From Octopus sinensis (taxonomy: Eukaryota), in NCBI RefSeq assembly GCF_006345805.1, contig NC_043002.1, positions 46,128,001-46,192,000 of the forward strand: DNA of 64,000 nt, in the 5' to 3' direction. Both the position numbers and the translations under genes were made by a program. Position 1 is the first letter of the stretch, and each line of letters opens with the position of its first letter. The notes under the pieces are model-generated. The model was not told where the DNA came from and made no database searches. It saw nothing but the letters and a program-made list of their open reading frames with translations. Positions 4,499 through 29,400 of the stretch are shown one piece after another.

Positions 4499-4535
<37 letters not shown>

Positions 4536-5221: not shown

Positions 5222-5222
<1 letters not shown>

Positions 5223-5259
<37 letters not shown>

Positions 5260-5350
5260 CACGCACGCACACACACGTACACACACACACATTTATTGAA
5301 TATCGAACCCAAGGTGTTATATTTGATTTGTTTATCTGTATAATCGCTAC

Positions 5351-5436
<86 letters not shown>

Positions 5437-5526
5437 CATATCATCACCATCATCATTTAACATCCGTTTTCCATGCTAGCATGGGTTATACATACACACA
5501 CACACACACACAACACACACACACAC

Positions 5527-5600
<74 letters not shown>

Positions 5601-5605
5601 TATAT
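5223..5605. repeat. Cluster of (CA)n/(TA)n microsatellites
   Basis: Tracts at about 5223-5291, 5351-5440 and 5488-5605. Confidence 0.9.
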
Positions 5606-5750
5606 TTATTGGACTTCCATCCAGCTTCTATCTTTCACTCAAAAGGCATTGGTCAATCCCAAGCTATAATAGAAAAAAAACTTGCTCAAGGTGCTTCACA
5701 GTGACGCTGAATCTCAATTAACATGGTTTTAAAGAAGGTTGCTTAACCAT
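5440..5750 (-). mobile_element. Internally deleted SINE remnant (head 5611-5750, tail 5440-5487)
   Basis: The reverse complement of 5611-5750 contains cactgtgaagcaccttgagcaagt...ctattatagc...gaccaatgcc, as in the other SINE heads. 5440-5487 is 44/48 identical to the reverse complement of the tail at 6258-6305. Confidence 0.65.
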
Positions 5751-5770: not shown

Positions 5771-6313
5771 AAGACATGTTGGGGCAAGCGAAATCGAAAT
5801 CGAATTGAACCAGCCAGGATCCCTGGTCTGGTGGTACGTAAAAAGCACTATCCGACTCGTGGCCGTGGCACGTAAAATACTCCAATGCGACCGTACGACA
5901 GGCACCCATGCCAACCCCCTTTGCTTGTGAAGACATGTTGGGGCAAGCGAAATCGAAATCGAATTGAACCAGCCAGGATCCCTGGTCTGGTGGTACGTAA
6001 AAAGCACTATCCGACTCGTGGCCGATGCCAGCACCGCCTCGACTGGCTTCCGTGCCGGTGGCACATAAAATACACCAATCCGACCGTGGCCGTTGCCAGC
6101 CTCGCCTGGCACCTGTGCAGGTGGCACGTAAAAAGCACCCACTACACTCACGGATTGGTTGGCGTTAGGAAGGGCATCCAGCTGTAGAAACATTGCCAGA
6201 TAAAACTGGAGCCTGGTGCAGCCTTCTGGCTTCCCAGAACCCCGGTTGAACCGTCCAACCCATGCTAGCATGGAGAACGGACGTTAAACGATGATGATGA
6301 TGATGATGATGAT
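5771..6313 (+). mobile_element. Young, CpG-rich, 5'-truncated SINE-type 3' segment with (GAT)n tail and internal duplication
   Basis: GC-rich island with intact CpGs, ending catgctagcatggagaacggacgttaaacga(tga)n. Contains a perfect 95-bp direct repeat (5771-5865 and 5930-6024). Confidence 0.75.
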
Positions 6314-6486: not shown

Positions 6487-6869
6487 TGCTTCCCAACCAT
6501 ATGGTTCCAGGTTCAGTTCCACTGCATGGCACCTTGGGCAAGTGTCTCCTACTATAGCCTCAAGCCAACCAAAGCTTTGTGAGTGGATTTGGTAGATGGA
6601 AACTGAAAGAAGCCTGTCATGCATATATATGTATATATATTCATGTGTGTGTGTAGGTCTTTGTGTCTGTGTTTGTCCCCCCACGATCGCTTGACAACTG
6701 ATGTTGGTGTGTTTATGTCACTGAAACTTAGCAGTTTAGCAAAAGAAACTGATAGAATAAGCACTAGACTTACACAGCATAAGTCCTGGTGTTGGTTTGT
6801 TCGACTAAAAGCAGTGCTCCAGCATGGCCACAATCAAGTGACTGAAATGTATAAAAGAGTAAAAGAGTA
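6487..6869 (+). mobile_element. tRNA-derived SINE, slightly 5'-truncated
   Basis: B-box-like ggttcagttcc, core gcaccttgggcaagtgtctcctactatagcc, central TA/TG tract, tail ending (aaaagagt)x2. Confidence 0.8.
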
Positions 6870-7754: not shown

Positions 7755-8460
7755 TATATTTACAAACTTTAGATTGGTTATATACATCTGAATTTATGTT
7801 CTACCAATGAAATTAGAATAATCATGGAATTAAAAATTTGTAATTGTGATATTTTATGTCATCTTCAGATGTATGTTTCTGTTTTCTTAAAATAATATAT
7901 TTTTGTTATTAGAATTGATACTTTTGAGGTTGTTATCTTTCCTTTTATTTTCTCTCTTAATATAAATGTCCTTATATGTTTACCATAACTGCTTTGTAAA
8001 TTGAGTATGGGTTAAGATATATCAATGCTTTTAGAAAAGACAAAAATGTTATAATTTCTATTTATTCTTCTAAATATTTGAAGTTTCAGGTCTAGCTGGA
8101 AGAAGCAACGAGAATCAATTTTAGTGTAACTGTAATTGTATAGTATGACATTGTTATGACCTGTTAAACTCAGACAACGATTTTAGTAAAAAATATCTTA
8201 GTATGCATTATCTATAATTGCTTATAGTTACAACATTCTTTCACATATATTGTTATCATCAAAAAATTATATTTAATTATTGTAGATATTAACTGGAAAT
8301 AGCATCGTTTGAAATAATGTTATACGTAATATATATTATTAGGAAAGACAGCAAAAAGGCTCAAAAGCTTGATTTTAATAACTGTAGTTCCAAAGATTAT
8401 TAAAAAAATGATTTTTTAGTTTTAATGAGATCATAATGGATATTTTTATTTCTTTTTCAG

Positions 8461-11400
8461 GTCTGAAACCAAACTTGGTGATTATCTTAGTAGTATATTC
8501 TGTAACCTTCAAACCATTAATAATCCAAGCAAGTAAAAACCAATATATTATTGAGTATTGGACTAAAAAAGCTGAAAAACAAATGGAAATCAATACATAT
8601 ATGCCAACACACTACAAACCCTATCAAATTAAATATATTAGGACAAATAAACTCTTAGATGAACAAAGTTTACAGAAAAAGTTAAAACATATATTAGATC
8701 TAAGAAAGCTTAGGCAAATTACTAATTCCAAATTTCAAAATTTATTTAATGAATCTGTGTTGTCATTGGAAGTATTTAGGGATAAACATAAGTTTCAGGA
8801 GATTCATATTGTATATATCAACCGTCTTAGTGACTTAGTAACCATTAAACCAAATTTAACATTAATCAACAAAAATCACAAGTTTTTTAAAAAAAGGAAA
8901 ATTAAAGTGATTCTGGTGCCCTTGGAAGAATTATATCATAGTAATAGCTCAAATTTTATTCTTAATATCATAAAGCAAAAACATTTACATAATAATTCTA
9001 AAATTAGTAGCTTTTCTAATAGTAAAAAGTTAAGGGTATTTTATTTTTTGCCAATTAAGGATAGAGTAGATGTTTTAAGTAATATGTTTCTAAACCAGTT
9101 CTTTAAATTTTGTTTTCTTTTACATAATAACTTGGAAATCTGTGATAGGTATAACATTACAAAATTGGTGGAGCAAAATTCAGCTGTAAATATTAAAATA
9201 TTGGTTATTATGGAAGATACTTTTATGAATATTTCAGAAATTGCATGGTACTTCCTTAAACCTCAAGGGATGAATGGTTTTGTAAATTATGTTTATTTAG
9301 ACAATTACAACTTTCTAATTAAAAAGACTAATGATAAAATAAATGATTTTGTAATTATTTGTAAGATTAAATCCCAAAACAGTACTTTTTCAACACTATT
9401 TGATGATAGATTTAAAGATGAAGTGGTATGCAAATATCTTAGTTCTCTGGGATCCTCTGTGATATTAATAGTAAACCATGCTAAAAGCAATACAGACTTC
9501 ATTGATGAAAAATCTGTTGAACTTCTTCATAATTATATCCCTGAAATTAAAATTTATGTATTAAAATCAAATATAATTCTCTATTTTAAAAATCATTACC
9601 TGAAATATAGAATAATTTCTCAAGCCCAAAGTAACTACTCAACAAAAAAAGATGTAAATAGTAAATTCAGTTTAAAGAATTTTAAAAACAAAGGCATTTA
9701 TGCACCAAAAACTGCAGTTTCTCAACTACCCTACATCCTTTCATCTAATTTATTTCATTTTGATATTCAAAACCATCCTCTATTTTTTAAGTCTACAGCT
9801 TCCATAATTTTTACTCAATTAAATTCTGGTGAAACAAGTACCCTGAATCCAAGTGTCAGTCTGTTTATGACAAAATCTGTGTTACAAATGCTCAACAATA
9901 CAAATAACATAAAGTTATTTGGCAAAAACATAATACAAGTAAGGAATTACAAATTATTTACTTCTAGAATCAAACGAGATATTAGTTTTGGAAACAGAAA
10001 AAAGCTGCATTTAAAAAAGAATGATGATTCATCATACTTAAAAAAACCAAAAAAAATATTTAAAATCCAATCACCAAAGAAACTAGCCAAACAAAGAATA
10101 GTTTCAAACCAAAAATTAGAAGATGAAGTTGATAATGAGGAGTTTGAAACTAGGTGCTCACAAGAAAGAGAAAAAGAGGAGGGATCAGACGACAGTCTTA
10201 AAAAAATACCTGAAATATTTGATAAATTTAATTCAGATCAAAGAGATTATTATGAAGATGAGAAAGTTAAGCACAGGCGAAAAATACATTTTCCATGGAA
10301 AAGAAATAAATTACAGAAATTTATAAATTCTAAAAAGAGAATTTCTAAAGTATTTGGCTCAAATAAAGTAAACAAAATAGAGTTATCTTTACAAAACACA
10401 GCAGTTAAAGGTGGAAATGAAGGCAGCCAGTCAATTGCAATTTCTCTTGTTTGTATTCATGAGACCAATTTTATAAAATATGGAAATAACATACCCGTAA
10501 CACTAAATTGCTCTTCTCCTGGCAAAGTTGCTCCTAAACCAGATGATATAATTGTTTATTTGTATTGCACTCCAAAAATAAATAGCAGCAATAGCAGTGG
10601 GGATAAAGTAGATATAGACTTAAACTGTGTTCCTGGATTGAGTGCTACTTCTAATGGCTCACTCTTACCAGTGAATCTTCACTGTACTAGTGACCTTAAT
10701 ATTCCTTCATATAAAGACTTTCTTCATATATCTTTAAACTGTCTGCCTATTGTAAAATATAACCATTCTGTGGATGAAAAACTCTCCCATGGAATAGTAA
10801 CTAGTAAAACAATTGAAATATTAATGACAGGAAATAAATCAGACCAATCAGAAAAACATCTGAGAAAACTCTCTGTATCTCTCAAATGTATAACACGCCG
10901 AGGCTTTGCAGTAGATGGGAAAACTATAGATGTTTTTGTACATTGTATACCAGGTTATGTATCTAAAACTCCCCGTAAGAAGCTTGTTGTTGCAAAATCA
11001 AAATTTTCAAGGAAACAAGGAAGGCAAAAATGTCCTTATCATAGGCTAAAAAAGGGGAAGAGATTGTATATAAAGAGATATTCCTTGAAAGATAAAAGAA
11101 AAAGACTTTTGTTGATCGATAAAGCAAAGAAAAAGGGATCACAATCTAGTATAGGGCAGCCAAAACAGAAAAGCAGAAAAAAGTCCTTACGGAAAAAGAT
11201 AAAACAGAAATATTTAAAAAAACATTTCCCTTCTAAACCTTGTAAAAAGCTTATGACTAAAATATTTACTACTCCAGCACCTGTTTCATCTACTACACTG
11301 AAAATGCTCAAAATACATCATACTCTATCTGTTTTATTAAAAAAAACTATATTATCTAATCCTGTGACTACTGTCAATTTGAGGAGAACAGTAAGTAGCA

Positions 11401-14400
11401 GACTTTTTAAACAAGTGACAATAAGTCAGAAACCCCCAATATTTTCTATTCCACTGAAACATACCGTTCAAAAACAATGGCATAGTTCTACAGAATTGAT
11501 CCCTTCAGTGAGATCAACACTACCTGTTTATGCTGAAAAATACAACACAACAGAAAGAGTATTAGGTATATTTAAAGAAGTCCTTACAACAAACAGACAA
11601 GAAGTGAAAACTAGCAACTTAAAATCATACAAAACATCACAAAATATAATACAATATTCACCATTCAGTTCTTCTAATATCTCCAAAATAAATAGTACTA
11701 GCAAAAAATTGGAACTCATAAGATCAGAGAAGTCATCACCAGTTAGAACACAATCTTACATGGTTACATCAAAAACATTATCAATCATTCCACATAATAT
11801 ACCTACAAAAATTACATCTAATTTTAGTCTGGATATTCTGTATCCAGAAAAAACAACTTTGGTGATAACCAAATTAGTTAAATTAGGTGAAAGTATGAGA
11901 TTATTTCCTAATATCTCCTATACTGAAGGAACAACATTCTCTAATTTGCATCTTAGGATCCAGTCTCAATTATATCAAAATAATCAAAGTAAAAGTATTC
12001 CTTCAAAAGATTTGAGTTCTTTAAAAAGTTATTATACTACTGTGAAAATATCCCTATCAAAGCAGGAGCCCTATTCCACAACTGCCATGGATTCATCATT
12101 TATATTCAAAAAGTATTTATTAGGACTACTTCAGACATTTAGAAGTATTGAGAGTACATCAAAAGCCCCAAAAGTATATCAAACTACACCTACTTGGTGG
12201 GAGTTATTGAAACTAAATGTGTCTAAATCACTAGAAACATTAGTAAAACCAGGTGAGAAATTTGTAACAGTTGCTTTAGACCAAACCAAATCAGTTGATG
12301 ACTTGTTTAAAAGCCTATCATTCATGACAGAAATTAACCAAACTACAGAACAAAGAGATGGTAGTAAAATAAAAATATATGAAATGCTTTCAAAGTCAAC
12401 AAAAAGAAAGTTATTTAGTGAAGAACAGATAATGATAACAACACAAGTAATTCTTCAATATACATTGTTTGAAAAAGTAAAAACACATGTAAAATATCAG
12501 CTAACACCAAAATATTTTTATACATTTTTAACACCATCTTTCTTATCTGATCAGATAACTACACCAATTACCAGAGAGAAACTACATAAATCACACTTTA
12601 TACCAACTGTATGGTTTATTGAGAAAAGTACATCTCAGTCTGTATTTCTTAGTATAGGCAGTCCAAAGATTCCACTGCTGATGAGCACAACGCACATTCT
12701 AGATCAACAGTTTTGGGACAAGATCTCTAGAAGAGTAACTGAGAAAATATCGACAAAAAAAGCAAGACAGTTAATTAAAGAATTTACTTTATCAGATGTC
12801 TCACAGAGTTCTGACAAAGGTTTCACTTCAGGAGATACAGATTTACTATATATCAACGCAAGCAAGAAATTACTTTCTCCTGGATCAGTTCATATAAAAT
12901 ATGTTCTTGGAGGAAATGTTGGTCAAGATGTAGGCTTGAACTATAACTTAAACACATATGAGATTTTTGTTCCTTGGTTATATATAACAGAACCAATGGT
13001 TCCATTAAATGAGTCTTTGATTACAGCAAAACATGAAAGATCAACTTCAGTAGAACGATTGAGACAAATTACCAAAAGTGATGATGAATCAAAACAAATT
13101 GGTTTAAAATCCAAAACTATTCATGATGATCCGAATTTAATTTTGGCTTTGTCAGGAGCAGAATTTGACAAGAAAAGTTTAAATGATGATAGAAAGTTAA
13201 TTTTCCATAAGCCAATATTACCTGCCTATTCTCTACCAGAAGAAACTGCAACCCCTATTTTATTCCAATCTAATGTACAGTATTTTGACCAAGAAGTTAC
13301 TTTTATAGATCTGACATATACTTATGATAAGGAGATATATGAAGCAAGAGAAACAGGCTCACTAAAAGAAATGTCAGTCCCATTTACTACTTTTCAAGAA
13401 AGGATATCAATTATGCCTCCTGAAAGCAGAGATTACATTGACTCTGGTGTTGATACAATAGAGTTGGAATTTATCACACAACAAAGGATGCTAAAATATA
13501 AAACTGAAGTAGAGGATAAACGTGGATTTGAAATTTTGAAAATTCCAAGAATTAGCGAAGAAAAATCAAGCGATCTTTTCAGTTCTACAACAATAACATT
13601 TGAGAGAACTCTGACTTTACAAACAAGAAATTTGTCAACTAGATCATTAAAATATGTAAGGACTGGAAGATTAACAGAAATTATCATTCAACATAAAGCT
13701 GTGACAGAAGCAACCATTTCAAGAAATACTACACATGTGCTTCTTTTAGAGGAATTACATTCTTATTCTTTTGCAACAACAATCTCACTGTTCAGAAGTA
13801 ATATAACTGCTGTTGCTAAGAAAGTTGTGACAGCTCCCCAAATACATATAGGTGGATCAATTTCTGCTAGTTATGTTATTGTTGATATGGATAACATCGT
13901 AGTTTCACAAGTATACACAAGTGGATCAATTTTTTCTGAGGATTTTATTGTTACTAGGGATGAAGTTCTACAAGCACATTCAGATCAATCATTTGTTGTG
14001 AGGGACATCACAATTTCACAAATACATATAAAAGTGACAACTACTAATAAGAATACAGTTGATACTAGGGAGACTGTTACAGTTCCACAGATACACATAG
14101 ATAGCATTCTTGGTCCTGTGAGTGTTGTTACTTGGAAGACTGTTATAGATTCGCAAATACATATAGACGATTCTCTTTTTACTAAGGACATTGTTACTAG
14201 AGATATGATCACATCTCAACAAATACATACAAATGGATCCACTGTTTCCAAAACTATTGTCGTTGCCAGTAATGTGTCCAAAGTTCCACAAATACATACA
14301 GTTGACTCCTTTATTTTTAAGGACAGCTTTCCTAGAGATATTGCTTCAGTTTCATCAAAAGGCATTGATGAATCAAGTATCCCTAAGTATTTACATATTG

Positions 14401-17400
14401 ATCTACAACTAGGCAGAACAAAACCAGAGATTGCCTTAGATGTTGGTACAACTCTAAAATATGATAGTAATGATTCAGTTTTTGTTACTGATGCAAGTGC
14501 ATTTCCCAAAATTTTAGAAAGATTAGCCATTAATGTTACACTGTTGGAAAAGGATGCAGATACTATGGTTGTTAGAGATTTTGTCACAGCTACACAATTA
14601 CTGAGAAATGGATCAATTATTACTAAAGATTTAGTAATTGATGGTTATGTATCTATTACTACAAAGAAAGTTATTACAGTACAAGTTGATTTAAATGGAT
14701 CATTTATTACTAAAGCTGCATATACAGTTCCAAATATTGATATTTCCAGATTAGATATCCCAATGGATGAAGCTACTCCAACAAGAATTACTAGTGATGG
14801 ATATATTGTTGCTCCTAACATTACATCTGTTCAACAAATTAACATCGATGGAATGATTATAGTCAAGGATTTTGTTACTATTCCACAAATTGATCTTGCT
14901 GGTACTAGTGTCATTGTTACAGTTCTAAAACCCGAGAAATCATTTAATATCATGGATGCAGTTACTGTTTTACTAAGCAATGCAGAGGGACTTAGTACTA
15001 CAGCAGATGCTGTAGTGAAGATTGGTCAAGATGAATTGGCTGTTGCTATACATACTGTCCAGTACCCACAAGTAGATGTATACACTTCATTTCTTACTAG
15101 AATACCTGTTATCTTTAAACAAACTGATATGGCTGTTACTAAATCAGGAAGAGTAAAAGATGAGTTTCTTGTTGCTAGATATAATGTTTCAGACCCACAA
15201 ATTTATGGATCAGATATTGTTAGTGATGCTGTTGTAACTAGTTCTGTTTCACACAGATACTTTGGTGGATCAACTTTAGTTCAGGACAGTGTTACACCAG
15301 CAGAAATTGACATGTATAAATCATTTGTAACCAAGGTTTCTTATAGCATGCATACTGATCAATTGGAAGATGCTGTGGATGTTGACGAATCAGATGTTAC
15401 AAAGGACACAGTTACCATTCCTTACATTACTAGAGATAAATCATCCATAGATAGATATATTTCTGTTGTTTGGTATCCTGTTATAATGATTTCTAAGGAT
15501 GGTGTTACTGTTCCACATATAGCTGGGTCAGTTCAACAAAGTACATCACTTCCAACTAGAGGTCCTGCTTTTATTTTGGAAGTAGTTAGTGGCAGATCAT
15601 TTGATCCCAGATATGCTGTCAAAGTACCTCCTTTTGATACTGATGGCCCAATTAGTTTTAGAGATTTTATTACTGTGTCACAAGTTGTTATTGAAGAATC
15701 TACATCAGTTCCTATGGGTACATCTGTAGTTTTGCCAAGTAACACAACTAAATCAGTGATTACTACAATTTTAATTAAAGTCACAGAAAAGGATGCATCT
15801 ACTAATACTAAAATAACTGTTAAAATTCCACAAATAGACAAGGAAGAACCAGTTTTTGGTAAGGATGCTGTTGATGATGTTAGGGAGATCATTAGTGTTC
15901 TACAGCCTGATGTAACTGTAAAATCAGCTGTTATTATGAGTGCAGTTACAGTTCCACAAGTTGATAGAGATGGATTGGTTATTACAAACGAAAAGACTGG
16001 GACAGATCCCCAAGGATATATAACAGCAATGAAACCACTAACCTATTTTCAGTCACCATTAACTTTTCAGAAACAGAAAACAATTACAATATATTTACCA
16101 TGGCATAAGACTTTTACTTCAAAATTTATAACTGAGCAGTCTACAACACAAACTAGACAAGATGATATTTGGTGGAAAAGAACACAAATCTTGGCTGATA
16201 ATGGTACTGATAAAAGAATAACTGCTACAGTTATGAGAATAATGGATATACAAACATTAGAAACGTCTCTCCAATTAGGAACTATCAAAACCTTAATGTT
16301 TAGAGTTGGTAAAGATTTTTTAAATGATTTATCAACATTCACAACAGAAAGAGAAAGCTGGAAGTTAACTTGGAGATACAATGTGACAATGTTACTAGAT
16401 ATAGTAGTTTCATACCCTACATTTTTTTCAACAGTGTCACCTACACTATTAATTTCTTCCACAAATATTAAAACAGATATTGATAAAAGCAAGCCAACAG
16501 TTATTCCCATTCAGTCAACAAACCCTACTAAGTCGTTTGGTACAACTATGAATCAAATCATTCAGCTAACAGCAAAAGAACTTTCAGAAGTGGACACTGT
16601 TACTTCCCTGACTATACTAAATGAAATGATTAGTAGCACTCTTACAGAAGATATATTTGCTTTTTCTGAAACATCAGTAACAACAACAGAGACCACTGAT
16701 CCTTTTTATTCAATGCTGGAGATGTCTGGTTATGAAATGCTTCATAAAAAAAAGTTATCTGAACATTTTAAGCAGATGTCTCAGTTAACTAATAGAGATA
16801 TGGAAATCTTAACACCGATGTCTTTATTGGCTCCAGGATATCATTCTGCAGACCATCTGAGCTCAGATTTCAGTTCTACCCAACAAAGATATTTGACAAG
16901 TATTGTTATTTCTCCCATTGAAGAATATTTTAGAAAAACACCAGAAACTACACAGTTATCAAAAGCCTTTTTTACAAGAAAGGAAAAACATGTGTCTCAT
17001 ACTGATTTTGTATCTAGTTTTTGGATGCCATCAGTAACTATAGAGACTATAAAGCCAAGAAAAGTTGATGGAGTACATAAAATTAAATCTAAAATGGTAG
17101 ATATTACTACATTTAATACCATTGATATCACCCATGGAAGATTACAGGGAAACAAAAGCAGATACGGTGAAGGATTAATTCTTTCTACTTACACATCACA
17201 AAGTGTAAGTCAACATTCTGAAGGCTTAGTTCTTTTTATAGGTAAACATGATAATGTGAGTGGATTTACTGAGAGGTTAGTTCCAACAGTAAGCTCATTT
17301 GATGTGAATAGATACCTGCACAGGCTTGTTCCTTCAAAAAGCAGTCCACAAAATGAGTTAATTTCTTCTTTGAGTTTGGAAATATCAAATATAACTAAAT

Positions 17401-20400
17401 TCAGTATTTCAACAGCTGAAAAGAAACACAAATTAGACTCAACAGAATTATATGAAGAGCATGGTCTTGAGGGAACAACAGATGTAACATTTATATTGGA
17501 AAATACACTGTTGTTTTTACCATTTGCAAGCCCGCCAGTGCTGAGTGAATTTATGAGTGAAACCTTAACTTCAGAAACTTCAACAGATGTAGAAGATACA
17601 GTATCATCTTCCTTACCAAAAGGTACATCAACCGAAACATTATGGAAACCTGATGCATTTCAAAAAACTTCTGATAAGCCAAAATATGACAAAGAGGATA
17701 AAATTACACCAAGAACATTATATACTGAAAATCAGTCTAAAATATATTTTCCATTCTTAAAACTACACAGCCAAGAAACTAGTTTTAAAACTAAAACCTT
17801 CTCAGAAGTACAGTCAAGTCCCTTGTATCAAGAAATAAAATTTGAATTACAATCTGAACCATACATGCATGATTTCTCAACTAAATTTGATAAATACAGA
17901 AGAAGTTTAATAAGTCAGCAAAGAGTGAAGCCATCTACAGATATAATGCAATCCAAACCCATTAAATGGCTAGATGTAACAACTGATGGTATTACAAAGA
18001 GTTTGATTAGAAGTGAAATGAAAGCAATGTTGGATCATACAAAACCAACAAGAAGGTATTTTAAGAAAAGAGATATAAGTGAAACTTTTTATCCATATCA
18101 AACAAGCACACCAGGCAGGTTTATTGATATTATTGATTTTTATGATAATGACACAGTAAAACAATTAAAAGTTATAGGTTATGTCACAAAAGAACATGGA
18201 GTTATAATTAAGAATGCTTCTTTTCTTCATACTATAACACCTAAAATATCTTCACATAAAGAAAATATTTCAAGCAGTTCTCTTTTAACCCTACCATCAT
18301 ATGAAAGCACTTACAGAGAATTGGAGTTTAGTAAACATGGTAGAAGCGATTTGGGTAAAATATTTACTGGACAATCAAAAATGCCACAAAATGTATCTAA
18401 ACCAATAAGAGATTTTGCAACATCGAAATTATTTGAGCCGTTTGAAACTAAACTTGGGACATGGCAACCACTTCTAGTTACCCAAACACCATTAATATCT
18501 GTATTCAAATCTCAGTATCAACTAAAAGAATATACAAAGAGAAAGATATTATATTCTTTGACTACACTTGCCAGATCTATAAATATGACAAAAACTACTG
18601 CATCAAAAGATGAAACATGTGTTTCTTTTAAAAAGGAAAGAGGAGAAGTGACACCCGCTTCATCAATTTATATATTAATAAATGGCAGTTCAGCCATAGA
18701 GGCAAAGACAAAGAAGCCAATAGCAACAAAAGAACCAATGACAAGAACTACCAGTCGTAAAATGAGCAGTGAAATTACTTTAAGCATTAGGACAAACATT
18801 TCTCATTTATCAACACAACACACTAAGACAATCCAAGATAAAATAACATTTGATTTATTGGAAAAACTTCATACAACTTTATTTACTCTAGCTGTTGTTT
18901 CAAACAGCACATCAAAGGAGTCTTTTATTATTACATCAGCTAGCAATGACATGCAGTCACTTTTAGCTACACCAGAAACAATATACCAAACATCATTTGA
19001 AATGTTTTTATTTAACATAGCTTCAAATGAAAGTAAAGTTTTCACAACGATGATACCTAAAATTAGACATAATATGTTTCAATTAAATGTACTGAATACA
19101 ACTATGTTGACTACTGCTCAAAAGATATCACAGGTAAGTAAATTATTACACATAATTAAACAAGCTGTGATAACTAATGCAACATTTGAATTAGTAGATG
19201 TATCAAGTACAGTATTCCCAAATATAACAAGTATCACTGCATCTGAAGTAAAATTGTCTGCAACTACAGACAGAGTCATTCATGTGGAAGAATTAACAAT
19301 TACAGTACAACAGATGTATGATGCAACAACAGAATTATCTGAAATGGCTCTTGTTGTTCTCCGTACTTCAGAATATTTTGATTCCTTATTAGCTACGAGT
19401 ACCAGTGCATTATTTGATAGAAGTCTAGATGTGTTTAAAATGAAAAATGAAAGTAATTTGAAACAATTCCTTCAACTTAGTACTAGTAATCAATTAAATA
19501 TACACATGAAAGGGACAATGGAAACATTTCATATTGGTGTAATCGAAACAACAAAATCTCAACGCAAAGGAACAGAACTGCCTATGTCTGAAATTCAGAA
19601 GAAAATTAGTGAAATTACTACAAGAATACTACCAACTGAAGTGAGTGAGAAAATAGATACAGCATTATTAGATGTAGCTGTTTTGCAGGGCACTGCCAAA
19701 ACACAAATGGCAGTTACAATTCGCTTTGAGATATTACACATTGATAGTGACCATAATATTTCAGCACTGGTTTTGGAAAATAAAAACATATCTGAGGCTG
19801 TTTTGCTTCCTTTCAAAGAAAATAGCACTCTAGCAAAACAGCCATTTATTACTGTAGATATTTGGTTTAATAATAAGACTATAAATGAACTGCAATATGA
19901 CCAAACTGAAAATTACTGGGTTGCATGGATACAGCAATCTTTAACACCTAAAGTACCCATTAAATTCATGACAGAGAGAAGAGTACAAATAACAACACAT
20001 GATCACTTTACACAAACCTGGAAATTAAGTGAAGCAGTTAAGCAAACCAGTGATGAAGCAATAACAAGAATCCCTCTTACTAAAACTACATCTCGAGAAA
20101 TAGCAATGAAATCTAAGTCCCAGGAATCACTAAAGGAAACAACTGGAAGTATGTTCTTGTTTAGTAGGGCTCCAGAGAGTTCTTTAGCACCACAGTTAAC
20201 CTCAGAAATGGAAAGTAAGGTTAAAAAAGCAACCAAATCTAGAATAGAAGTTGAAAGAAAATCCTTAGATAGAAAGACTATCAGTAAAACTGAAATATCA
20301 TTGATTTACATTACAGAGAGTATAACTGTATCAACAGTAGAACAGAAGCAAATTTTACCAAAACCATTGATAAAAATGAATGAGTCAAGTACTGTTATAA

Positions 20401-23400
20401 TAAAAGGGGAAGAAAATGCCTATAGTACAGGAAATGTTAGCAATATGCTACATGTAACCAAGCCATTAGTGGTAATGTTTAAAACAATCAAAACGAAAGC
20501 TTTGGCTGACATTGATGTTTATAGGACTGAATTAACAACAGTAGAAAGTAAATTTATGCCTAAATTTTTGCCTTTCTACCATGAAGGCGATATTACAACA
20601 CCAAAGATTCTAATAATCAGAACAATATCTAAAAGTGTGGTTCCATCTCAGAGCAAAAAAGTTGCTGAACCATCATTGTCAATTATCCAAGTAACATTTG
20701 GAACATCAAGTTACGATAGTATGAGTCAAACTAAGTCTCCATTAGTTTACTTAAACAAGTCTATACAGACCATCACAACATATTTAGGTATAAATATCAG
20801 AAAGACTTTGATAACCACTCAGATAAATGAATTTGTATGGCCATCAACATCTAAAGTAATCCTGGACTCACAGATATTCAGAACACCATTGACAGAAATT
20901 GTAACAGAGACTACTGAAACATCAAAAATGCTAATAGCCAGTAACACGACTCATTTATTAACCAAAGCTATACCTGAATTTTTGTTAAAGCACAATACAG
21001 AGATCAAAACAACATATTTAATTGGTGATTTAGTAAATATAACTGAATTACCCACCAAATTCATGTGGGATGTATTACTATACAACATAGGGTCACCTAA
21101 AATGATTCAGTCACATAGACCAAGACATATTTATCAAATGTCAAATACAAGCAATGAAACACTAATTCTAGTCCCAACCGTTGCTAATGAAAGGTTCATA
21201 AGAAAATCTCTAGATTTTGTTCAGAATACAAGTTTATCTTTTCATATTACAGAATCTTTTACTTTAGAATCTATTACAAAGAAATCCGTAACAGAAAGTA
21301 CAATCGTTGCCCAAAAGAAATCGTTAAAAACTACCTTGGACTTAGCTGATAAATCAATCACAACTGAAAGAGTGATTTTTAGCATAACAATGCATATCAC
21401 CCCCGACATTTCTCTTATTTCGGTGACTTCTGTAATGAAACCACTTAGCAGTCAATATGTCTTGGAAAAATCATTTGTGTCAAAATATAGATGGGAGCAA
21501 TCTTACATCTATAAGGTAGACAAAACAACCCTTCATTTACAGTACTTCCAACCCTTTACAAATATATCATCAAAACTAACTCTTTTGAGCACACCCAAGA
21601 TGGAGTATGATTCCAGTCCACAACTAAACTTATCAGATGTTAAAATTCAGATTACAACTTTACCTTTTATTCCAACACAGAAAACACTCACACCTTACAT
21701 TGATTATGATACCAAGCTTTTTAACTCTACATTTCTCCTGCAGCCTATAAAAACTAAAACTAAGATAGATCTTAAACATCTTTTCTCAAATCGAACATCT
21801 ATGACAGACTTGGTTAGTTTAGTCCCTTCAAAGATGTCAATTCTAAATACATCAATAGATTCCTGGCAGAAAGGCATTTCTATGACTGTTATGCCAAAAC
21901 TAAACTTTTCTTCATTAGTTTCACCAAAAACTTATTTTAAGCAAGTAACAAAAAGAATGAGGAGAATACCATATGTGTCAGTAACAACTGTTACAAATAG
22001 AACTAGCTCTGAACAAATGGCTTCTGTGTTAGAAATGCAGACTCCAATGAAAATATGGACATTAAGGGAAGTAACAAGACAATGGCAAAGAACTGCAAGT
22101 TTCTCTGAAATGTATGGGTTAAATTTATATCTTTATACTACAAAAGTAAGTCAGACTTCTCCTCATGGATTTTCAGTTTCTCTTACTCCTCTCAAGTTAT
22201 TTCCTATTACCTCTCTATCCAATACTCCTCTCCCAACAATCATTACTCTATCTCTCGTCACTGCTACTGCCTCATATATAGTTACATTTGAACTGAAATT
22301 AAAGCAAAGAGAAAAGACCTCAAGTTTGCCAATAATCCAATCGACCACTGACGTTACATTTTATAATCAACCCATCTCAAAAACAGAAAAAACATTAACA
22401 AGTGTGAAACCAACTTACAGTGAATCCTATGATATAGTATCCTACTTCAGTAATGTTAAATTGATTCCGTTCTTTTATGTGGGAGACATCATGTCAACAA
22501 ATATGCTGTCAATTCAGCTAAGTAATAGAACTGATAGTAGACTTCCAAAATTAAACTTTACATCAGACAAAGAAACAACATCTACAACTATGGAATTTAT
22601 TGAAACAATTATAGACCCAAGTGATGAAAAGGTTTTAAAAATTTCATCTTCAACACCTATTAAATTGATCATATCAAGACAAACTTTTCTGACTAATCCT
22701 AGTCAACTTTCCATTACACCCATAACTGATTCTAGCTTTTATTACAGATCATTCCAACCTTCAACTATAACATCTTTGCACCAAATCACAATGACAACTG
22801 ACTTCATGAATGCTTCTATAACAGCATTTTCTCACTGGACAAATGAACAGAAATTAGGAAAAGCTTTTATATCTACATATATGTATAAATTAGAAGAAAA
22901 ATCTACTTCAAAAAGTCTGCATTTTGTGTTTCCAGTTGGTAAAGAAGTAACTACTGTTTTATCAGGATTTAGTTTTGATGACAGGTTAATAAATAAGACA
23001 AACAATATTTCACACATAAAATATTTATTTTCAAAACCTGAGATAGTTGATAATAATCTACTATATACACCATCATTTCAAAAGTTATTAGAAAATAGAA
23101 CATTATTGGTAACAGTCATGCAAGAAATATCTGTAGTTAGTCAACCAAGGGTGTTTTCTCCTCAAGAAACATCTAAAGGATTTCTGTTTGCTGTATCATC
23201 ATCTCAAAATCTATCAGAAAGCACCAAGCTCTTCACTAAACCACAAATTCTTGAAACGCCTGAAGATATTCTGTTGACCGCAACTTCATTTCAACAGGTA
23301 TCAGAAGGCATTAGCATACAAATGAGATCATCGTTCATTGAAACATCTGAAGATATCTTGTTCACAACAGATCTATCCCAGGGGATATCAGAAAGAACCA

Positions 23401-26400
23401 GCCTACTAGTTGAAACACCTTCTCAAAAAATGGATAAAGATATTTTAGTAACAATATACCCAATTCAAACAATACTTGAGGAAAGAACAATCTATTCTGA
23501 AACTAGGCATTTACTCCAGACACATCAACTTTCATTTGATGTTACAACCAAGCAAGTACTAGAAGAAAATCTTGACTCTATTTCATCAAAACCATATAGT
23601 TATGGAAAATATGTAATGCCAGCCTGGATGCATTTTACCACCACATCAGCTTGGAAATTGGGAGAGGTTTCAAAACTGAAAAACCAAACTGACAAACCAG
23701 TCACCAGTGATTTATTCAGAGTAACCAGAAGTTACTTTATCAAAGAAGGACAGTCTATTACAGATGATACTGAAACTGAATGGTATAAATTGTTAGAAGT
23801 TTCTACACAAAAACTAATTTACAAATTACCAAAAACTAAAAAAACAACTCAATTGTTGATTTCATTTATAGCTTATTCTAACACCTATTTTGACAGTATG
23901 ATTACTTTTATTACAACTCAAACTACAGTTTCATCAAAAGTATTTTCTTCAATTGAAGAAAGTGAGTTAAAAATCAAATCAGTATCACATCACACGGTTA
24001 CACAATCATTTCAAAAGTTTGATTATGGTTTAATATCTAAAGATCACAGGCATAAAGTAAATACAATATTTATATTAGATTATTATGATTTTTCGACAAG
24101 CCAATACTTTACAACAGATTCCTCTGATAATTTACCATTTAAAACAGTTCAATATTTTAAAGAGTCAAGCAGTGAAGTTTCGTTCTTACCACACTTACTT
24201 TATAATATAACTTCTTTGTTATCTAGATATCCTAATCAAACTAGTGTTTCTCTTTCATTTGCCCAATTGATCACAAGTACTGATGCTACTTTTGTGTTTA
24301 GTCAAACCTCTAAAATAAAAGTAATAGGTTCAACTACTGAAACTAATGCTAGTCAAATTAGTAAACTTCCTTTCAGTACATTAGTTTCTTCAAAACCAAG
24401 TGCTATTACTACTGAAAGTACAAGCAACTATTTATTAATCAAACCAATATTTAGTGTAGAACCAAAATATCCAAATTTAACAATCAAGTATGAAACAAGT
24501 AGAAATGTATCTGAAACTTTTGCTGACATTAATGAAAGAAGTATTTTGACAACAGATGTACAATTCCTGACATTTCCTGAAACCAAAGTGGTAAAGAGAA
24601 CAAGTACTGATTATGTAATTTGGTCTTTAGATGATACTTCTGAGAAAGTCACACACTATACTTACAAGGAAATAACTAGCTTCCATAAAACAGGGAAAAC
24701 ATTTTATATTTTAGACAAAATTTATTCAGAATCATTACTTCAAACCTCTTCTGAAGTAATTGGTTACATTTTGGTAACAAGCCAAGCATTTCAAGAATCG
24801 TCTTTGTTTAGAGAAAGTTTTCAAAGAGAAATAAAATTCACTCAAAAGTCAGATTTTATTACGCAGGTTCAATTGGAGTCAATTTCAGCTACTGTGCCTT
24901 TCAGCCATAAGGATTATTTTGCCTTACTTCCATCTGGCTCAAGAGCAAAAACTTATACTGAGGAAATTTACACATATAGACTTAATTTGGAGGACACTTC
25001 AATTTCAAAAAGGCCTCAACAATTATTATCCACTAAAATTAAAACAAGTAAATTTCCTTTAAGTAGTTTTACTATAATGCTTGATGCATTTGAAGATAAA
25101 AGAGACCACACTATTTCACCTCATATTTTCATGTCAACTTTACCTTTAGTGGTCACTTTAGATTATAGCAAAGATGATGCTTTTGCAAAACTGAAAAGGC
25201 TTTCTCAAGTCCCAAGTTTATCAAATATTACTAAATTGATTGTAACTAAAGGAAGACAAGGATTTTTATCAGAACTTGATAAAATAAGCATTAGCACAGG
25301 CTCAGAGCAAACTACTGTAGTAGCAGAAATAGAAGTTGATTATGAAACACATGAAAAAAATGTTTCAATATACCAAAAAGATTCTGAAATATTTACATTC
25401 ACAAGCAAAATAAAGACTAGAGTAGTCAATGAAAGTAGCATAAAGAGTGACATTTTAACTGAATCAACACCTAGAAGCATCATAAGACATTCTTTAGAAC
25501 ATAAACTAGCTTTAGAAGAAATACCAAGTTATACAACAATTCGAAATGTAACTGACATAATAACGGTATTGCAAGTTACAGGCATTGTTACTCAATTTGA
25601 AATATCAACATTAGCAACCCCATTGTATAGACCCAAGGTAGCTTTTGTAAGTGATGCCAAATCAGCAACTGAGTCTTTCTTTATTACATCAATAATCTTT
25701 TTCACATCAACAGAAAGCATGTTACTAGATGTTGCTTCAAGTTCTAAAGCATTAATGCATGAACAGAAATTACTTCAAAATAAAGGTTTGCAAAGCAAAT
25801 ATCATACTACATATTCAGCAAAAGGATTTGCAGATTTCATATCAACTTTGCAGGGAAATCTTACATCCATGCTTACAGATTCAGTACAATTACCTGCTAT
25901 TGTAATTGGATTGTATTCAACAGATATGAAGACATTAATTTTTATTAACACTACTTCAAACACTACCGAATATGTTACCAGGACCTCCAGAACAACCATT
26001 GATGAACAAAGTGATAGTAAAATAATAAAGTATACTGCTACACCAGTTGAATTAGATAAACGTAAATTAATATATTTGAAAGAAGCCATAGAGCAGAAAT
26101 CTACCCCTGTGATCTTTACATCAATATCTATGAAAATATATACATTATCTAAAATTATTTCAGAGGAAGTAACTCAAATAACATTCATCACTCTATCTAC
26201 ATACCCTGAAATGATAACAGAAACTTTCTTCACAAATATATATGATGTCAGACATATTTTGAAAAACACTACAAGGAAAACAGTTTCCCATATATTGAAA
26301 AAATCACTTCATACAAAAATTACTTCAGCTGGTCCAATAGATAGTTTGAATAAATCTGTAATGCTATCAAGGGATTTAAGCACAACTTTTTTTGTTAAGA

Positions 26401-29400
26401 TTGAAACCATAACCTTTCCTACAAAGGAATTCAGTATTTCTCCTCAGTACCCTGGTTTGCAAGAAGATATAAGTACCTATGTGCCTAGTCCTGTTGTTGC
26501 AATATCTACTGAAAATATTTTGATAACAAGTAAAATGAAACCTTTAATATATCTAAATGAGTCAGATACGAAATATTTTTCAAAACACAACATTAGTTTT
26601 AAACCTAAAGAACAAGTAATCAGCACTGAACTTGGTTTCACAATGATTATCAAAAACACTACTGGTGATATGATAATTACAAAAAGAGCAAAAAAGATAA
26701 GCAAGAAATTTAGTGAGCTGGAACCAACTTTAAGAACAGTCATTCCAGCAGATATGATATATACTAATCAAACAAATTTAACCATCCCTCAAAGTGCTAC
26801 AACTGATTTGGAGTTTTCTTTGGAAACATTTGCTGTTGTCAAAGATATAATAAAATCAACAACTAAGGAAGACATAATAACCACTCTAGCATTCATTAAT
26901 CAAATTTCAGAAGAAACTATTTCTGAGAAGCCAGCAATAAGTGTTTCAAATATAGCTTTCTTGAAAGAAGCAATTACATCCAGAGCTTATGAAGATAATG
27001 TTACTGGCATAGAATATATATGGCAATTTGGAATTAGGTATTTTACAAGCTTACCTTATTCTAAAACTGACTACTTTAATATAACATACACCCAAGAAAA
27101 AATGTCTGGATTATATATAACAACAACAACAACAACTACACCAGTATTTATCATTAAAAATATTTCTATTTCAAAATATTATATTCAACAAGAAGAATCA
27201 TTTTTGACAACCACAATAATGTTACCTATTTTGATGAAATCTCATGATGAAGAAACTGAAAAGAGTAGCAAAGATATTTCTGAAATGCAAACAACACTTT
27301 CTGATAGCAGAATCCTCATAGATGCACCTGCTGGAAGCCTGTACATAGATGCTGATGTGTATACGACTGAAGTAATCAGTAAACCAATTACTCATGGTTA
27401 TATATATATGACACATAATATTTCAAGTAGTGTGTTAACAAAGCTAGATGTTATACCACATTTAAGCAAGAGAGTAAGCATGCTTATTACTAATTTTTAT
27501 GATGACATTCATCAACAGTCTATTCAGAGTTCAAATGTAACCAGTAAGAAAAAAATCATTGAAGAATCATCCAAGATTTTGCCAAAGCAATCTGCAAGAC
27601 ATACTGGATTTTACTCTACTATCTTTAGCAAACAATTCTCTACTCTGATATTTTCGTCATATCATTTTGATATAGTTACCACTACCAGCATTAAAAGGAA
27701 ATATTTTGTGGGATATACTGTAAGTCCATTTAAATTAGATGACAGCTATTCAACTGTGAAAAGTAGCTATTTCCTATCGTGGAAAGATGTTCAGGCAACA
27801 GTTAGGTTAGCTATATCAAATATTACTGCTAATATTAGTGACACATCAAGTGAAAAGGCTGAAATAATAATACATGGATTAAGATCTGGCACAGTTTTTC
27901 CTCTAGAAAAATTAACTAAGAAGCCTGTCTTTTATACAAGTTACAAGAATGATTCTCAATTAAGTAAAATCATGGACACTATGCTACAAGATACAATTAC
28001 TGAAATTATAACACCAAGTATTATTTTGAGGAAAATATATACAGAAATATTGTCATTTAAGAAACAAATTACTGGAAGTCCATTAATATACTTTTATAGA
28101 CAAGATGTTGACAGTTATGACCAAATAATAAGTACACAAGAGGTAATAATTGACAGATTTCAAACTAAATTTGCCACACCTAAAACTGAGCCTCAGCTTA
28201 GTCTTGTTGCTATAAAGAGTACATGCTGTGGCTTATATGAAGTCATATATCCTAAGAGCAAAGATGTAACAATACCAAATATATCCTTTAACATATCTTT
28301 TGCTACTTTGCTTTTTAACCAAAGCATTTATATGTTGGGTAGTTACACAGCAGCTATTTTTGATAAAGTAACTATAATTCCATACTCTAAAGATATTACA
28401 GAAACAACTAAGAATACATGGGGTATAGTTCATATACTTCATATACCATTAACAACTGATATGGTATTTGGTATCAACATTACAAATGTATCTGACATTG
28501 GCATTTATGGAAGCAATGATACAATACAAACATTGCAAAAACCAGCAGAAGCATCAATTGACATTATTGATACTACTGATAATGTGGTTAAATATTTTAA
28601 GGAAACAGAGATATCCAAAATAATTATAGCCACATCCCAAATAAAAACTGATATCAGAATGAAAACTACTGAAGCTGATAAAATGGCTTCATCTACAGAA
28701 AGCAGTGAAATATCAATGTTGTATTTAAAAGCAAAGACCAAATTAATTTCTACTTTTCATACATTAAAAGATTCACCTGGAGTATCATATAAAACAAGCC
28801 TTGAAGTAATTTCAAAGAAAAATGATACAGAAACAGTAACGACAACATATTTTATTGTTTCTCATATGGAAGATAAAAACTATAGTAATCTGATGGTACT
28901 TGGTATGACACCAATTTTAGAAAGTAGAATCATTCTTAAAAACAAAACAGAAATAATGCTAAGTTCATTCCTTGAAACACTAGAAACCTCCTTATTGTAT
29001 TCTGAATCACCTGAAATATCAACTGATCATTTTAAATCACGAGAAAAATTCTTATTCTCTACTTTTGAAAAAAAAGTGATACCTGTTACCCACAGAACCA
29101 CCACCACAAGAATCCATGTAGATAAATTACCATTAATAGAAACTATCTTTCTGAGCTTGCAAACAGTTAGTATCAGAAAAAAGTACACTGTTTCAATACC
29201 AGTCATCACTTCCACAAGAAGTTTTAAAAAAACATCTCAAAAGGAACATAAAAAGGATGGGCTGAGTTATCCATTTAAACTTAAATCAGAGACAGTGAAG
29301 GATACCTATACAAAGGTAACAGATAAGACAACAACGCCAAACCAAACCATGGAACAAATTGACCTAAAGGATATTCTGCATTTAAATACAGAACAAAACA

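What the first reader, a model, noticed from the sequence alone, without database searches (positions are those of the whole stretch)
10434..10952. Unrecognised 19-residue single-cysteine beta-strand repeat (8 copies)
Seen: IAISLVC, IPVTLNC, IIVYLYC, VDIDLNC, LPVNLHC, LHISLNC, (IEILMTG without Cys), LSVSLKC, IDVFVHC. Each is followed by a ~12-aa polar Gly/Pro/Asn/Ser linker; Cys spacing is 19, 19, 20, 19, 19, 49, 19. It does not match the mucin CysD, VWD, EGF or CTCK patterns I know. Inference: a beta-solenoid or stacked-strand module with a disulfide ladder or intermolecular cross-links, possibly a new polymerisation domain replacing the VWD assembly used by gel-forming mucins.
Basis: partly seen in the sequence, partly recalled or inferred. 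Interest (0 to 1): 0.72.

Follow-up and report, generated by a model that had tools for sequence, protein, structure and literature searches.

The report
Orphan single-cysteine beta-strand repeat array
Near the start of a giant (over 18,500 residues), probably secreted and sugar-coated protein of an unidentified AT-rich eukaryote lies a real array of about ten 19-residue units, each a beta-strand ending in one cysteine; it matches no known family, probably stacks into a short beta-solenoid, and has no proven role in polymerisation.

Summary
The motif phi-x-phi-x-phi-x-Cys occurs eight times in an 18,529-codon open frame (8412..63998+). All eight lie at aa 681-845 (nt 10434-10952), with Cys spacings of 19, 19, 20, 19, 19, 49, 19. 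Three Cys-less units (N662, G807, K864) sit in register, so the array has about 11 units (nt 10377-11039). The invariant Leu uses five different codons, and linker DNA identity (33%) is near random (28%). The pattern is therefore kept at protein level and is not a recent DNA repeat. Nothing known matches: no hit in Pfam, NCBIfam or PDB sequences, and none in three word-indexed searches, an exhaustive phmmer against 1.84 billion representatives, or bacterial, viral and metagenome contig scans. Single-sequence AlphaFold2 failed (pLDDT 31). The hydrophobic residues and the Cys all fall on one strand face. They are followed by a Pro/Gly turn, a short second hydrophobic stretch and a Gly-Asp/Asn loop carrying N-glycosylation sequons. 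My best reading (about 0.4) is a stack of strand-arc-strand units, curli-like in architecture, with a core-edge cysteine ladder. This would be a rigid folded module between an N-terminal globular region and the huge Ser/Thr-rich body. Disulfide state and polymerisation are untested.

The parts
8412..63998 (+). Host gene: a single open frame of 18,529 codons that runs off the 3' end of the window. It is rich in Thr (14.5%), Ser (11%) and Ile (10%) and has 0.2% Cys. It looks like a giant secreted glycoprotein.
   Evidence: No Pfam domain above cut-off. No homologue.
8436..8531 (+). Probable N-terminus. There is an ATG at 8436, or alternatively a splice acceptor tttttcag|gt ending at 8460. A signal-peptide-like hydrophobic stretch LVIILVVYSVTF (aa 22-33) follows.
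   Evidence: Read directly from the sequence; no predictor was run.
8532..10046 (+). N-terminal region of about 505 aa with mixed helix and strand character and 4 Cys. It is an orphan.
   Evidence: AF2 single sequence gave pLDDT 30.8. No family or homologue.
10377..10433 (+). Unit 0 (aa 656-674). Core IELSLQN, with Asn where the other units have Cys, exactly 19 residues before Cys681.
10434..10778 (+). Units 1-6 (aa 675-789). Cores IAISLVC, IPVTLNC, IIVYLYC, VDIDLNC, LPVNLHC, LHISLNC. Cys codons at 10452, 10509, 10566, 10626, 10683, 10740. Unit lengths 19, 19, 20, 19, 19, 19.
10779..10811 (+). 11-residue insertion (KLSHGIVTSKT) at the unit boundary between unit 6 and unit 7, in the loop that closes unit 6. 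It explains the 49-residue Cys gap.
10812..10868 (+). Unit 7 (aa 801-819). Core IEILMTG, with Gly in place of Cys.
10869..10982 (+). Units 8-9 (aa 820-857). Cores LSVSLKC and IDVFVHC, with Cys codons at 10887 and 10944.
10983..11039 (+). Unit 10 (aa 858-876). Degenerate core LVVAKSK, with Lys at the two positions (-2 and 0) that are Leu and Cys elsewhere. Possibly a C-terminal cap.
   Evidence: The cap role is inference.
10983..11291 (+). Strongly basic segment (aa 858-960, 37% Lys+Arg) that follows the array and overlaps its last unit.

Best explanation
The array is a small folded module of about 9-11 stacked 19-residue units.

Proposed fold (inferred):
- Each unit forms a strand-turn-strand (beta-arch).
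- Strand 1 is a 7-residue strand, phi-x-[IV]-x-L-x-C, whose positions -6, -4, -2 and 0 all point to the same, buried side.
- A C-phi-[P/S]-x turn follows, then a short second strand with hydrophobic residues at +4 and +6.
- A polar Gly-Asp/Asn loop carrying N-glycan sequons closes the unit.
- Stacking the units in register would give a two-sheet parallel beta-solenoid roughly 45-50 Angstrom long. Its aliphatic spine would be flanked, at the end of strand 1, by a ladder of eight cysteines.
- That is the place where other solenoids carry Asn, Gln or Cys ladders. Here Asn sits at that position in unit 0.

Proposed role (inferred): a rigid, protease-resistant spacer or handle between the N-terminal globular region and the enormous glycosylated body of a secreted protein.

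What is shown: the periodic pattern, its statistical reality, its maintenance at protein level, its position in the protein, and the absence of any known relative.

What is inferred: the fold, the buried ladder and the role. Whether the cysteines are reduced, as in known ladders, or stapled rung to rung is left open.
For: - Periodicity and position-specific conservation are strong. Positions -6/-4/-2 are 8/8 aliphatic, and 0 is Cys in 8/8. The intervening positions -5/-3/-1 are variable and mostly polar, which is the signature of a strand with one buried face. Positions +4 and +6 are hydrophobic in 5/8 and 6/8 units. Pro is at +2 in 4/8, Gly is common at +10 and Asp/Asn at +11.
- Selection acts on the protein, not on a DNA repeat. 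The conserved Leu uses CTT, CTA, TTG, TTA and CTC. Linker nucleotide identity is 33% against 28% expected at random, while the core is 53%. TRF finds no DNA repeat here.
- All six N-x-S/T sequons of the region begin outside the three aliphatic core positions. Five lie wholly in linkers, and one (N699-C-S) spans the ladder Cys itself. This fits exposed loops in a secreted protein.
- Asn replaces Cys in register in unit 0. Asn and Cys are both known ladder residues in solenoids.
- Cysteine ladders are documented in solenoid proteins: five stacked Cys at a turn/strand junction of a right-handed beta-helix lyase, where they stabilise the fold (PMC9410043), and the InlJ LRR 'novel cysteine ladder' (title cited in PMC3196904).
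- Curlin repeats show the same strand logic. They have a 7-residue motif with positions 1, 3, 5, 7 core-facing and a polar ladder residue at the strand end, 4-residue X-G-X-X arcs, a repeat length of 23 +/- 5, and insertions tolerated in the arcs (PMC10192328).
- A 19-residue period falls within that range. The only length irregularities here (a 20-residue unit and an 11-residue insertion) lie in the linker.
- The AF2 model, though unreliable, places strands on the cores of five units (3, 4, 5, 6 and 8), with a sixth strand on the 11-residue insertion running into the start of unit 7.
Against: - There is no structural evidence. AF2 gave pLDDT 30.7 and pTM 0.29, no homologues were available to build an alignment, and there is no PDB sequence match.
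- The second strand is weakly defined, and the linkers are very variable and polar for a two-sheet core.
- Leave-one-out profiles do not recover the omitted unit, so the 'family' rests on a 7-residue pattern.
- Extracellular proteins rarely keep eight free thiols, which favours some disulfide arrangement I cannot specify.
- There is only one instance, in one genome, so conservation across species is unknown.
- AF2 is known to over-predict solenoids for repeats (PMC11795689). Even a confident model would therefore not settle the question.
Confidence: 0.4

Rival explanations
1. The array is a polymerisation or cross-linking domain. The periodic cysteines form intermolecular disulfides (or open solenoid ends stack head to tail), joining giant monomers into a gel, in place of the VWD/CTCK system of gel-forming mucins.
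For: - 15 of the frame's 32 Cys, including this cluster of eight, lie in its first 944 residues, where mucins place their assembly domains.
- No VWD, C8, TIL, CysD or CTCK is present in the window.
- Uncapped beta-solenoids such as curli polymerise by end-to-end stacking (PMC10192328).
- The protein looks secreted, and free thiols are unusual outside cells.
Against: - The Cys is on the buried face of the strand, as in structural, reduced ladders.
- The terminal unit carries Lys at core positions, which looks like a cap against end-to-end growth.
- The C-terminus of the protein is outside the window, so classical assembly domains may still exist.
- No experimental or comparative evidence exists.
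Confidence: 0.15
2. Same stacked fold, but the eight cysteines are oxidised pairwise between neighbouring rungs (681-700, 719-739, 758-777, 826-845). This would make a covalent staple ladder that makes the module mechanically and proteolytically tough.
For: - The number of Cys is even.
- The only large break in the array (the Cys-less unit plus the insertion) falls between putative pairs 3 and 4, not inside a pair.
- The protein is extracellular.
Against: - In-register neighbours in parallel sheets are about 4.8 Angstrom apart, which is awkward geometry for disulfides (general structural knowledge).
- The cysteine ladder for which I have a structural description (the beta-helix lyase FdlA) is described as a stacked ladder, with no disulfide mentioned (PMC9410043). 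My recollection that the InlJ ladder is largely reduced was not checked here.
- The 20-residue unit lies inside putative pair 2.
Confidence: 0.2
3. Not a solenoid. The units are beta-hairpins forming an antiparallel meander, a hairpin superhelix, or one or two beta-sandwich domains. The cysteines then have some other role, such as metal binding or pairing with Cys582, Cys874 or Cys944.
For: - The Pro-Gly at +2/+3 could be a tight hairpin turn.
- Repeats of 19-20 residues mixed with one 30-residue unit recall hairpin-repeat solenoids of cell-wall-binding type (recalled from memory, not tested beyond Pfam).
- Isolated extra Cys flank the array.
Against: - Near-perfect 19-residue regularity with one long strand per unit is unusual for sandwiches.
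- There is no Pfam hit to CW_binding or any Ig-like family at E<=1.
- None of the aromatic signatures of hairpin repeats is present.
Confidence: 0.15
4. An artefact: a chance pattern, a decayed DNA tandem repeat with no protein-level meaning, or non-coding sequence.
For: - The array has no homologue anywhere.
- The same degenerate DNA pattern in bacterial genomes picks up only off-frame 57-bp tandem repeats.
Against: - The region lies inside a 55.6-kb open frame in 31% GC DNA.
- Chance probabilities range from about 1e-7 to 6e-13.
- The linkers are at random nucleotide identity while the core amino acids are kept through different codons.
Confidence: 0.02

Closest known systems
Curlin repeats of CsgA/CsgB (bacterial functional amyloid; Pfam Curlin_rpt)
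   Same: Short tandem units (23 +/- 5 aa there, 19 here). A 7-residue strand with positions 1, 3, 5, 7 core-facing and a ladder residue at the strand end. A short Gly-containing arc. Insertions tolerated in arcs. Degenerate terminal units (PMC10192328).
   Different: No N/S...Q ladder residues and no twin a/b motif symmetry. The second strand is weak. No Pfam hit. The host is a eukaryotic giant glycoprotein, not a secreted bacterial fibre subunit. There is no evidence of amyloid-like polymerisation. This is an architectural analogy only.
Cysteine ladders in solenoid proteins: the InlJ-type leucine-rich repeat and the right-handed beta-helix lyase FdlA
   Same: One conserved Cys per coil, stacked into a ladder at a strand/turn junction that stabilises the fold (PMC9410043; InlJ paper title cited).
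   Different: The LRR signature LxxLxLxxN/CxL is absent from the units, with 1 chance-level match in the region and no LxxLxCxxN anywhere. No LRR or Beta_helix Pfam hit. The period of 19 is shorter than typical LRR (20-30) or PbH1 (about 22-25) coils.
Gel-forming mucin assembly domains (VWD-C8-TIL, CysD, CTCK)
   Same: A Cys cluster close to the N-terminus of a very large Ser/Thr-rich secreted protein.
   Different: None of these domains is detected in the 18.5k residues inside the window. There is one Cys per 19 residues rather than multi-Cys knots. Pro content is only 4%, and the central 13,000 aa is non-repetitive, so even 'mucin' is a loose label.
Other ~18-20-residue beta-solenoids (RTX beta-roll, left-handed hexapeptide helix, the 19-residue Ca-bound helix of a bacterial ice-binding adhesin)
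   Same: A coil length of about 18-19 residues is compatible with compact two- or three-sided solenoids (recalled from memory).
   Different: Their Gly/Asp calcium motifs or [LIV]-G-x4 hexapeptide periodicity are absent. No Pfam hit.

Membership tests
Leucine-rich repeat (including InlJ-type Cys-ladder LRR) | Highly conserved segment LxxLxLxx(N/C)xL in each unit | tested here: not met
   A regex over aa 641-885 finds 1 match (0.65 expected from the frame-wide rate), and it is not in unit register. LxxLxCxxN occurs 0 times in the frame. Hydrophobic residues are at -6/-4/-2 relative to Cys, not -8/-5/-3/+2.
Leucine-rich repeat (including InlJ-type Cys-ladder LRR) | Match to the Pfam LRR models | tested here: not met
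   0 Pfam families at E<=1 for aa 1-1000 and for the 203-aa array.
Curlin repeat (CsgA-like) | Paired motifs N/S-x-Psi-x-Psi-x-Q separated by X-G-X-X arcs; Pfam Curlin_rpt | tested here: not met
   No Q or N ladder pair in the units and no Pfam hit. Only the strand geometry is analogous.
Gel-forming mucin assembly domains | VWD/C8/TIL at the N-terminus, CysD within the PTS region | tested here: not met
   A Pfam scan of all 18,529 residues gave only a sub-threshold Extensin_1 hit (77 bits against a cut-off of 105) in the decapeptide repeats.
Gel-forming mucin assembly domains | C-terminal CTCK or VWC dimerisation domain | not testable with these tools
   The ORF runs off the window at 63998, so the C-terminus is unseen.
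Right-handed parallel beta-helix (PbH1 / Beta_helix / pectate-lyase-like) | Match to the Pfam beta-helix models; three-strand coils of about 22+ residues | tested here: not met
   No Pfam hit. The period is 19 with one strong strand per unit.
Cell-wall/choline-binding hairpin repeats (CW_binding_1) | About 20-residue repeat with conserved aromatic and Gly signature; Pfam PF01473 | tested here: not met
   No Pfam hit at E<=1 and no conserved aromatic column.
Beta-solenoid fold in general (structural class, not a sequence family) | In-register parallel stacking of successive units at 4.8 Angstrom rise | tested here: inconclusive
   The AF2 single-sequence model has pLDDT 30.7. No alignment was possible because no homologue exists in the libraries. 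Only the sequence pattern supports this.
Any solved structure | Sequence similarity to a PDB chain | tested here: not met
   phmmer best E was 1.7 (an unrelated Rai1 protein). The unit profile gave 0 hits at E<=10.

The most novel reading that the evidence does not exclude
An animal (or other eukaryotic) giant secreted glycoprotein uses a previously undescribed curli-like cross-beta module as its assembly device. The module is 19-residue beta-arches with a cysteine ladder. Monomers would join by end-to-end or side-by-side stacking of the solenoid, locked by thiol-disulfide exchange along the ladder. That would be a polymerisation principle independent of the VWD/CTCK system of known gel-forming mucins.
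Probability: 0.1. Interest if true: 0.8.

Novelty: new variant of a known kind. Interest (0 to 1): 0.45.

Why it matters
If the module folds as proposed, it would be an unrecognised sequence family of short beta-solenoid in a eukaryotic extracellular giant protein. It would have one of the longest cysteine ladders described (eight rungs). That would make it a compact natural scaffold of interest for repeat-protein design, and for understanding how non-vertebrate mucus-like or adhesive proteins are organised without VWD domains. If it also mediates assembly, it would be a new polymerisation mechanism for gel-forming glycoproteins. At present it is a single orphan instance with no structure and no comparative data. 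Its immediate value is as a well-defined, cheap target (about 230 aa) for expression and biophysics, and as a seed motif for searching the genomes of relatives.

Tried and rejected
- **Homology searches, all empty.**
  - Word-indexed searches used the N-terminal 852 aa, 3,000 aa of the central region and a three-row profile of unit triplets.
  - An exhaustive phmmer of the 852 aa against 1.84 billion representatives gave 0 hits at E<=1e-3.
  - These libraries are weighted toward prokaryotes and metagenomes, so absence of animal relatives is weak evidence.
- **Contig scans, nothing confirmed.** Metagenomes, viral contigs and bacterial/archaeal genomes were scanned.
- **Family libraries.** Pfam on the whole frame and on upstream ORFs, NCBIfam and Rfam gave nothing above threshold.
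- **Structure.** AF2 single-sequence runs on the array and on the N-terminal region both gave pLDDT of about 31, so no fold search was run, since it would be meaningless. A pseudo-alignment of shifted repeats could not be built, because MAFFT would realign identical segments.
- **Homology-free search.** I scanned bacterial genomes for three units of T....RT....YT....TGY at 57-nt spacing. Every one I inspected was a near-identical 57-bp DNA tandem repeat read off-frame (linker identity >=67%). They are not analogues.
- **Leave-one-out HMMs.** They failed to recover the omitted unit, so the unit profile is too weak for database mining on its own.
- **LRR reading.** Considered because of the N/C swap in unit 0 and the InlJ precedent. 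Rejected on the motif test.
- **Organism.** It could not be identified. Microsatellites and interspersed repeats only indicate a eukaryotic, probably animal, genome.
Full report
**Context**

The window is AT-rich (GC about 0.31, rising to 0.42 at the 3' end). The first 8.4 kb holds dinucleotide microsatellites and interspersed repeats and no convincing ORF.

From 8412 to the end of the window runs a single open frame of 18,529 codons. A frame this long cannot stay open by chance in 31% GC DNA, so it is coding.

Its product is rich in Thr (14.5%), Ser (11%) and Ile (10%) and has only 0.2% Cys. Residues 1000-14,400 show no internal repeats by self-BLAST. Several tracts are tandem repeats full of N-x-T sequons: the heptapeptide HNTTVTP and the decapeptides YRPxxTDVTI and TAVTDETLPG.

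A hydrophobic stretch near the start (LVIILVVYSVTF) sits just after an ATG at 8436, or after a splice acceptor ending at 8460. It looks like a signal peptide (read by eye). The host is therefore a giant, probably secreted and heavily glycosylated protein of a eukaryote, probably an animal.

**The observation**

The eight Cys are at aa 681, 700, 719, 739, 758, 777, 826 and 845 of the frame, with spacings of 19, 19, 20, 19, 19, 49 and 19.

- The motif [ILVMF]-x-[ILVMF]-x-[ILVMF]-x-C occurs eight times in 18,529 residues, and all eight are here. None of the other 24 Cys has it.
- The chance figures are small: about 6e-13 for the hydrophobic triplet before all eight Cys, about 1e-7 for Leu at -2 in 7 of 8 units, and 0 of 1e6 random placements reproducing the spacing.
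- A degenerate DNA pattern for three units hits only the two triplets of units and no shuffle.
- The array is longer than reported. That gives about 11 units over aa 656-876 (nt 10377-11039), with one 11-residue insertion in a linker.

**Is it a protein-level feature?**

Yes.

- TRF sees no DNA repeat here.
- Pairwise nucleotide identity between units is 33% in the linkers, against a random expectation of 28%. In the cores it is 53%.
- The invariant Leu is written with five different codons from both Leu codon families.

The units are therefore old, and the phi-x-phi-x-L-x-C pattern has been held by selection on the protein while everything else drifted. This internal evidence partly substitutes for the missing orthologues.

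**What the pattern says**

The column table gives the following:

| Position | Content |
|---|---|
| -6, -4, -2 | aliphatic in 8/8 units (I/L/V; I/V; L) |
| 0 | Cys in 8/8 |
| -5, -3, -1 | variable, mostly polar |
| +1 | often beta-branched or aliphatic |
| +2 | Pro in 4/8 |
| +3 | often Gly or charged |
| +4 and +6 | hydrophobic in 5/8 and 6/8 |
| +10 | often Gly |
| +11 | Asp/Asn |

Six N-glycosylation sequons lie in the region. Five are wholly in linkers, and one (N699-C-S) spans the ladder Cys itself.

The Cys is thus the fourth residue on the buried face of a 7-residue strand. A turn, a short second strand and an exposed loop follow. That is the layout of a beta-arch.

Stacked in register, the arches would give a two-sheet solenoid with an aliphatic spine and a cysteine ladder at the strand/arc junction. 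The Asn at the ladder position of unit 0 fits, because Asn ladders occupy such junctions in other solenoids. The Lys residues at core positions of the last unit look like a cap (inference).

**Comparison with what is known**

Nothing matches by sequence:

- Pfam gave no hit on the array, on the first 1000 aa, or on the whole frame. The only signal was a sub-threshold Extensin_1 hit in the decapeptide repeats.
- NCBIfam gave nothing.
- PDB sequences gave nothing with the fragment or with a unit profile.
- Three word-indexed searches found nothing.
- An exhaustive phmmer against 1.84 billion cluster representatives found nothing.
- Metagenome, viral and prokaryotic contig scans found nothing.

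The LRR idea was prompted by the N/C swap and by the InlJ 'cysteine ladder'. It fails the motif test.

The nearest architectural analogue I found is the curlin repeat. It has a 7-residue strand with positions 1, 3, 5, 7 core-facing and a ladder residue at the strand end, X-G-X-X arcs, a length of 23 +/- 5, insertions in arcs and degenerate end repeats (PMC10192328).

Cysteine ladders that stabilise a solenoid from inside are documented in a beta-helix lyase (PMC9410043). These are likenesses in how the module may work. Every membership test that could be run was negative.

**Structure prediction**

AF2 without an alignment gave pLDDT 30.7 for the array and 30.8 for the N-terminal region. I did not run fold searches on such models. 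AF2 is also reported to produce confident but unrealistic solenoids for repeat sequences (PMC11795689).

**Interpretation and rivals**

| Reading | Confidence |
|---|---|
| Folded stacked-strand module with a core-edge Cys ladder, acting as a rigid element between the N-terminal region and the glycosylated body | about 0.4 |
| Same fold with rung-to-rung disulfide staples | about 0.2 |
| A non-solenoid beta arrangement | about 0.15 |
| Artefact | about 0.02 |

- For the staple variant: the Cys number is even, and the only big break falls between putative pairs.
The buried-face position of the Cys and the cap-like last unit speak against it. The unseen C-terminus leaves the question open.
- No result here discriminates the redox state of the thiols.

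**A search that led nowhere**

A homology-free scan of bacterial genomes for the periodic codon pattern returned more than 120 loci. All those I inspected were near-identical 57-bp DNA tandem repeats read off-frame. None is an analogue of a diverged, protein-constrained array like this one.

**Verdict**

The feature is real, statistically solid and protein-constrained, and it is unrecognised by every library I could query. Its fold and function remain inferred from one sequence.

It is best filed as a new sequence variant of the known class of short beta-strand tandem repeats (solenoid-like, with a ladder residue). It should not be filed as a demonstrated new polymerisation domain. Interest is moderate (0.45). 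It would rise sharply if orthologues keep the ladder, or if the fragment is shown to self-assemble.

Noticed in passing
window 8412-63998 (+): A single open frame of 18,529 codons runs off the window, so the exon is longer than 55.6 kb. Residues 1000-14,400 are Ser/Thr/Ile/Lys-rich yet show no internal repeats by self-BLAST, have no Pfam domain and have no homologue. A non-repetitive stretch of this length is unusual for a 'mucin'. Pro is only 4%.
   Followed up: partly
window 30150-30786 (+): About 30 copies of a 21-nt unit encode the heptapeptide HNTTVTP/LNTTVTP. Nearly every copy carries an N-x-T sequon, which makes this a dense N-glycosylation tract.
   Followed up: partly
window 56871-58476, 59045-59898, 60789-63082 (+): Long 30-nt tandem arrays encode decapeptides (YRPxxTDVTI about 52 times; TAVTDETLPG about 77 times). 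GC rises to 0.42 here. A sub-threshold Pfam Extensin_1 match (77 bits against a cut-off of 105) is compositional.
   Followed up: partly
window 59129-63295 (-): Five antisense ORFs of 158-316 aa lie entirely inside the decapeptide repeat arrays of the giant + strand frame. They are most likely stop-free by-products of the repeat, not genes.
   Followed up: no
window 8436-8531 (+): An ATG at 8436 and a canonical-looking acceptor (tttttcag|gt, AG at 8459-8460) lie just before a signal-peptide-like hydrophobic stretch. Whether the gene starts here or has an upstream exon is open.
   Followed up: partly
window 8532-10046 (+): An N-terminal region of about 505 aa has alternating strand- and helix-like segments and 4 Cys. 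The segment KILVIMEDTFMNISEIAWYFLKPQGMNGFVNYVYL reminded me of periplasmic-binding-protein/ANF-receptor-type domains, but Pfam, NCBIfam and phmmer found nothing, and AF2 failed (pLDDT 30.8).
   Followed up: partly
window 10047-10376 and 10983-11291 (+): The array is flanked by highly charged segments. The one before it is mixed acidic and basic (27% K+R, 18% D+E). The one after it is strongly basic (37% K+R) with several di- and multibasic sites (KRKR, KKGKR, RKK). These could be processing sites or polyanion-binding stretches.
   Followed up: no
window 2019-5609: A cluster of dinucleotide microsatellites (TG, CA, AT, AC, TA; up to 124 copies) and a CAT trinucleotide run, typical of eukaryotic non-coding DNA.
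   Followed up: no
window 2665-2823 / 6487-6645 and 5771-5865 / 5930-6024: A 159-nt inverted pair at 79% complementarity, 3.7 kb apart, and a perfect 95-nt direct duplication at 159-nt spacing inside a higher-GC element. These look like interspersed (SINE/MITE-like) repeats. There are no tRNA or Rfam matches.
   Followed up: no
loci L016, L108, L114, L053, L070 (bacterial genome contigs): The periodic codon pattern picks up many bacterial 57-bp near-perfect DNA tandem repeats. Read in that frame they give Cys-rich pseudo-peptides, and they are unrelated to the finding.
   Followed up: partly
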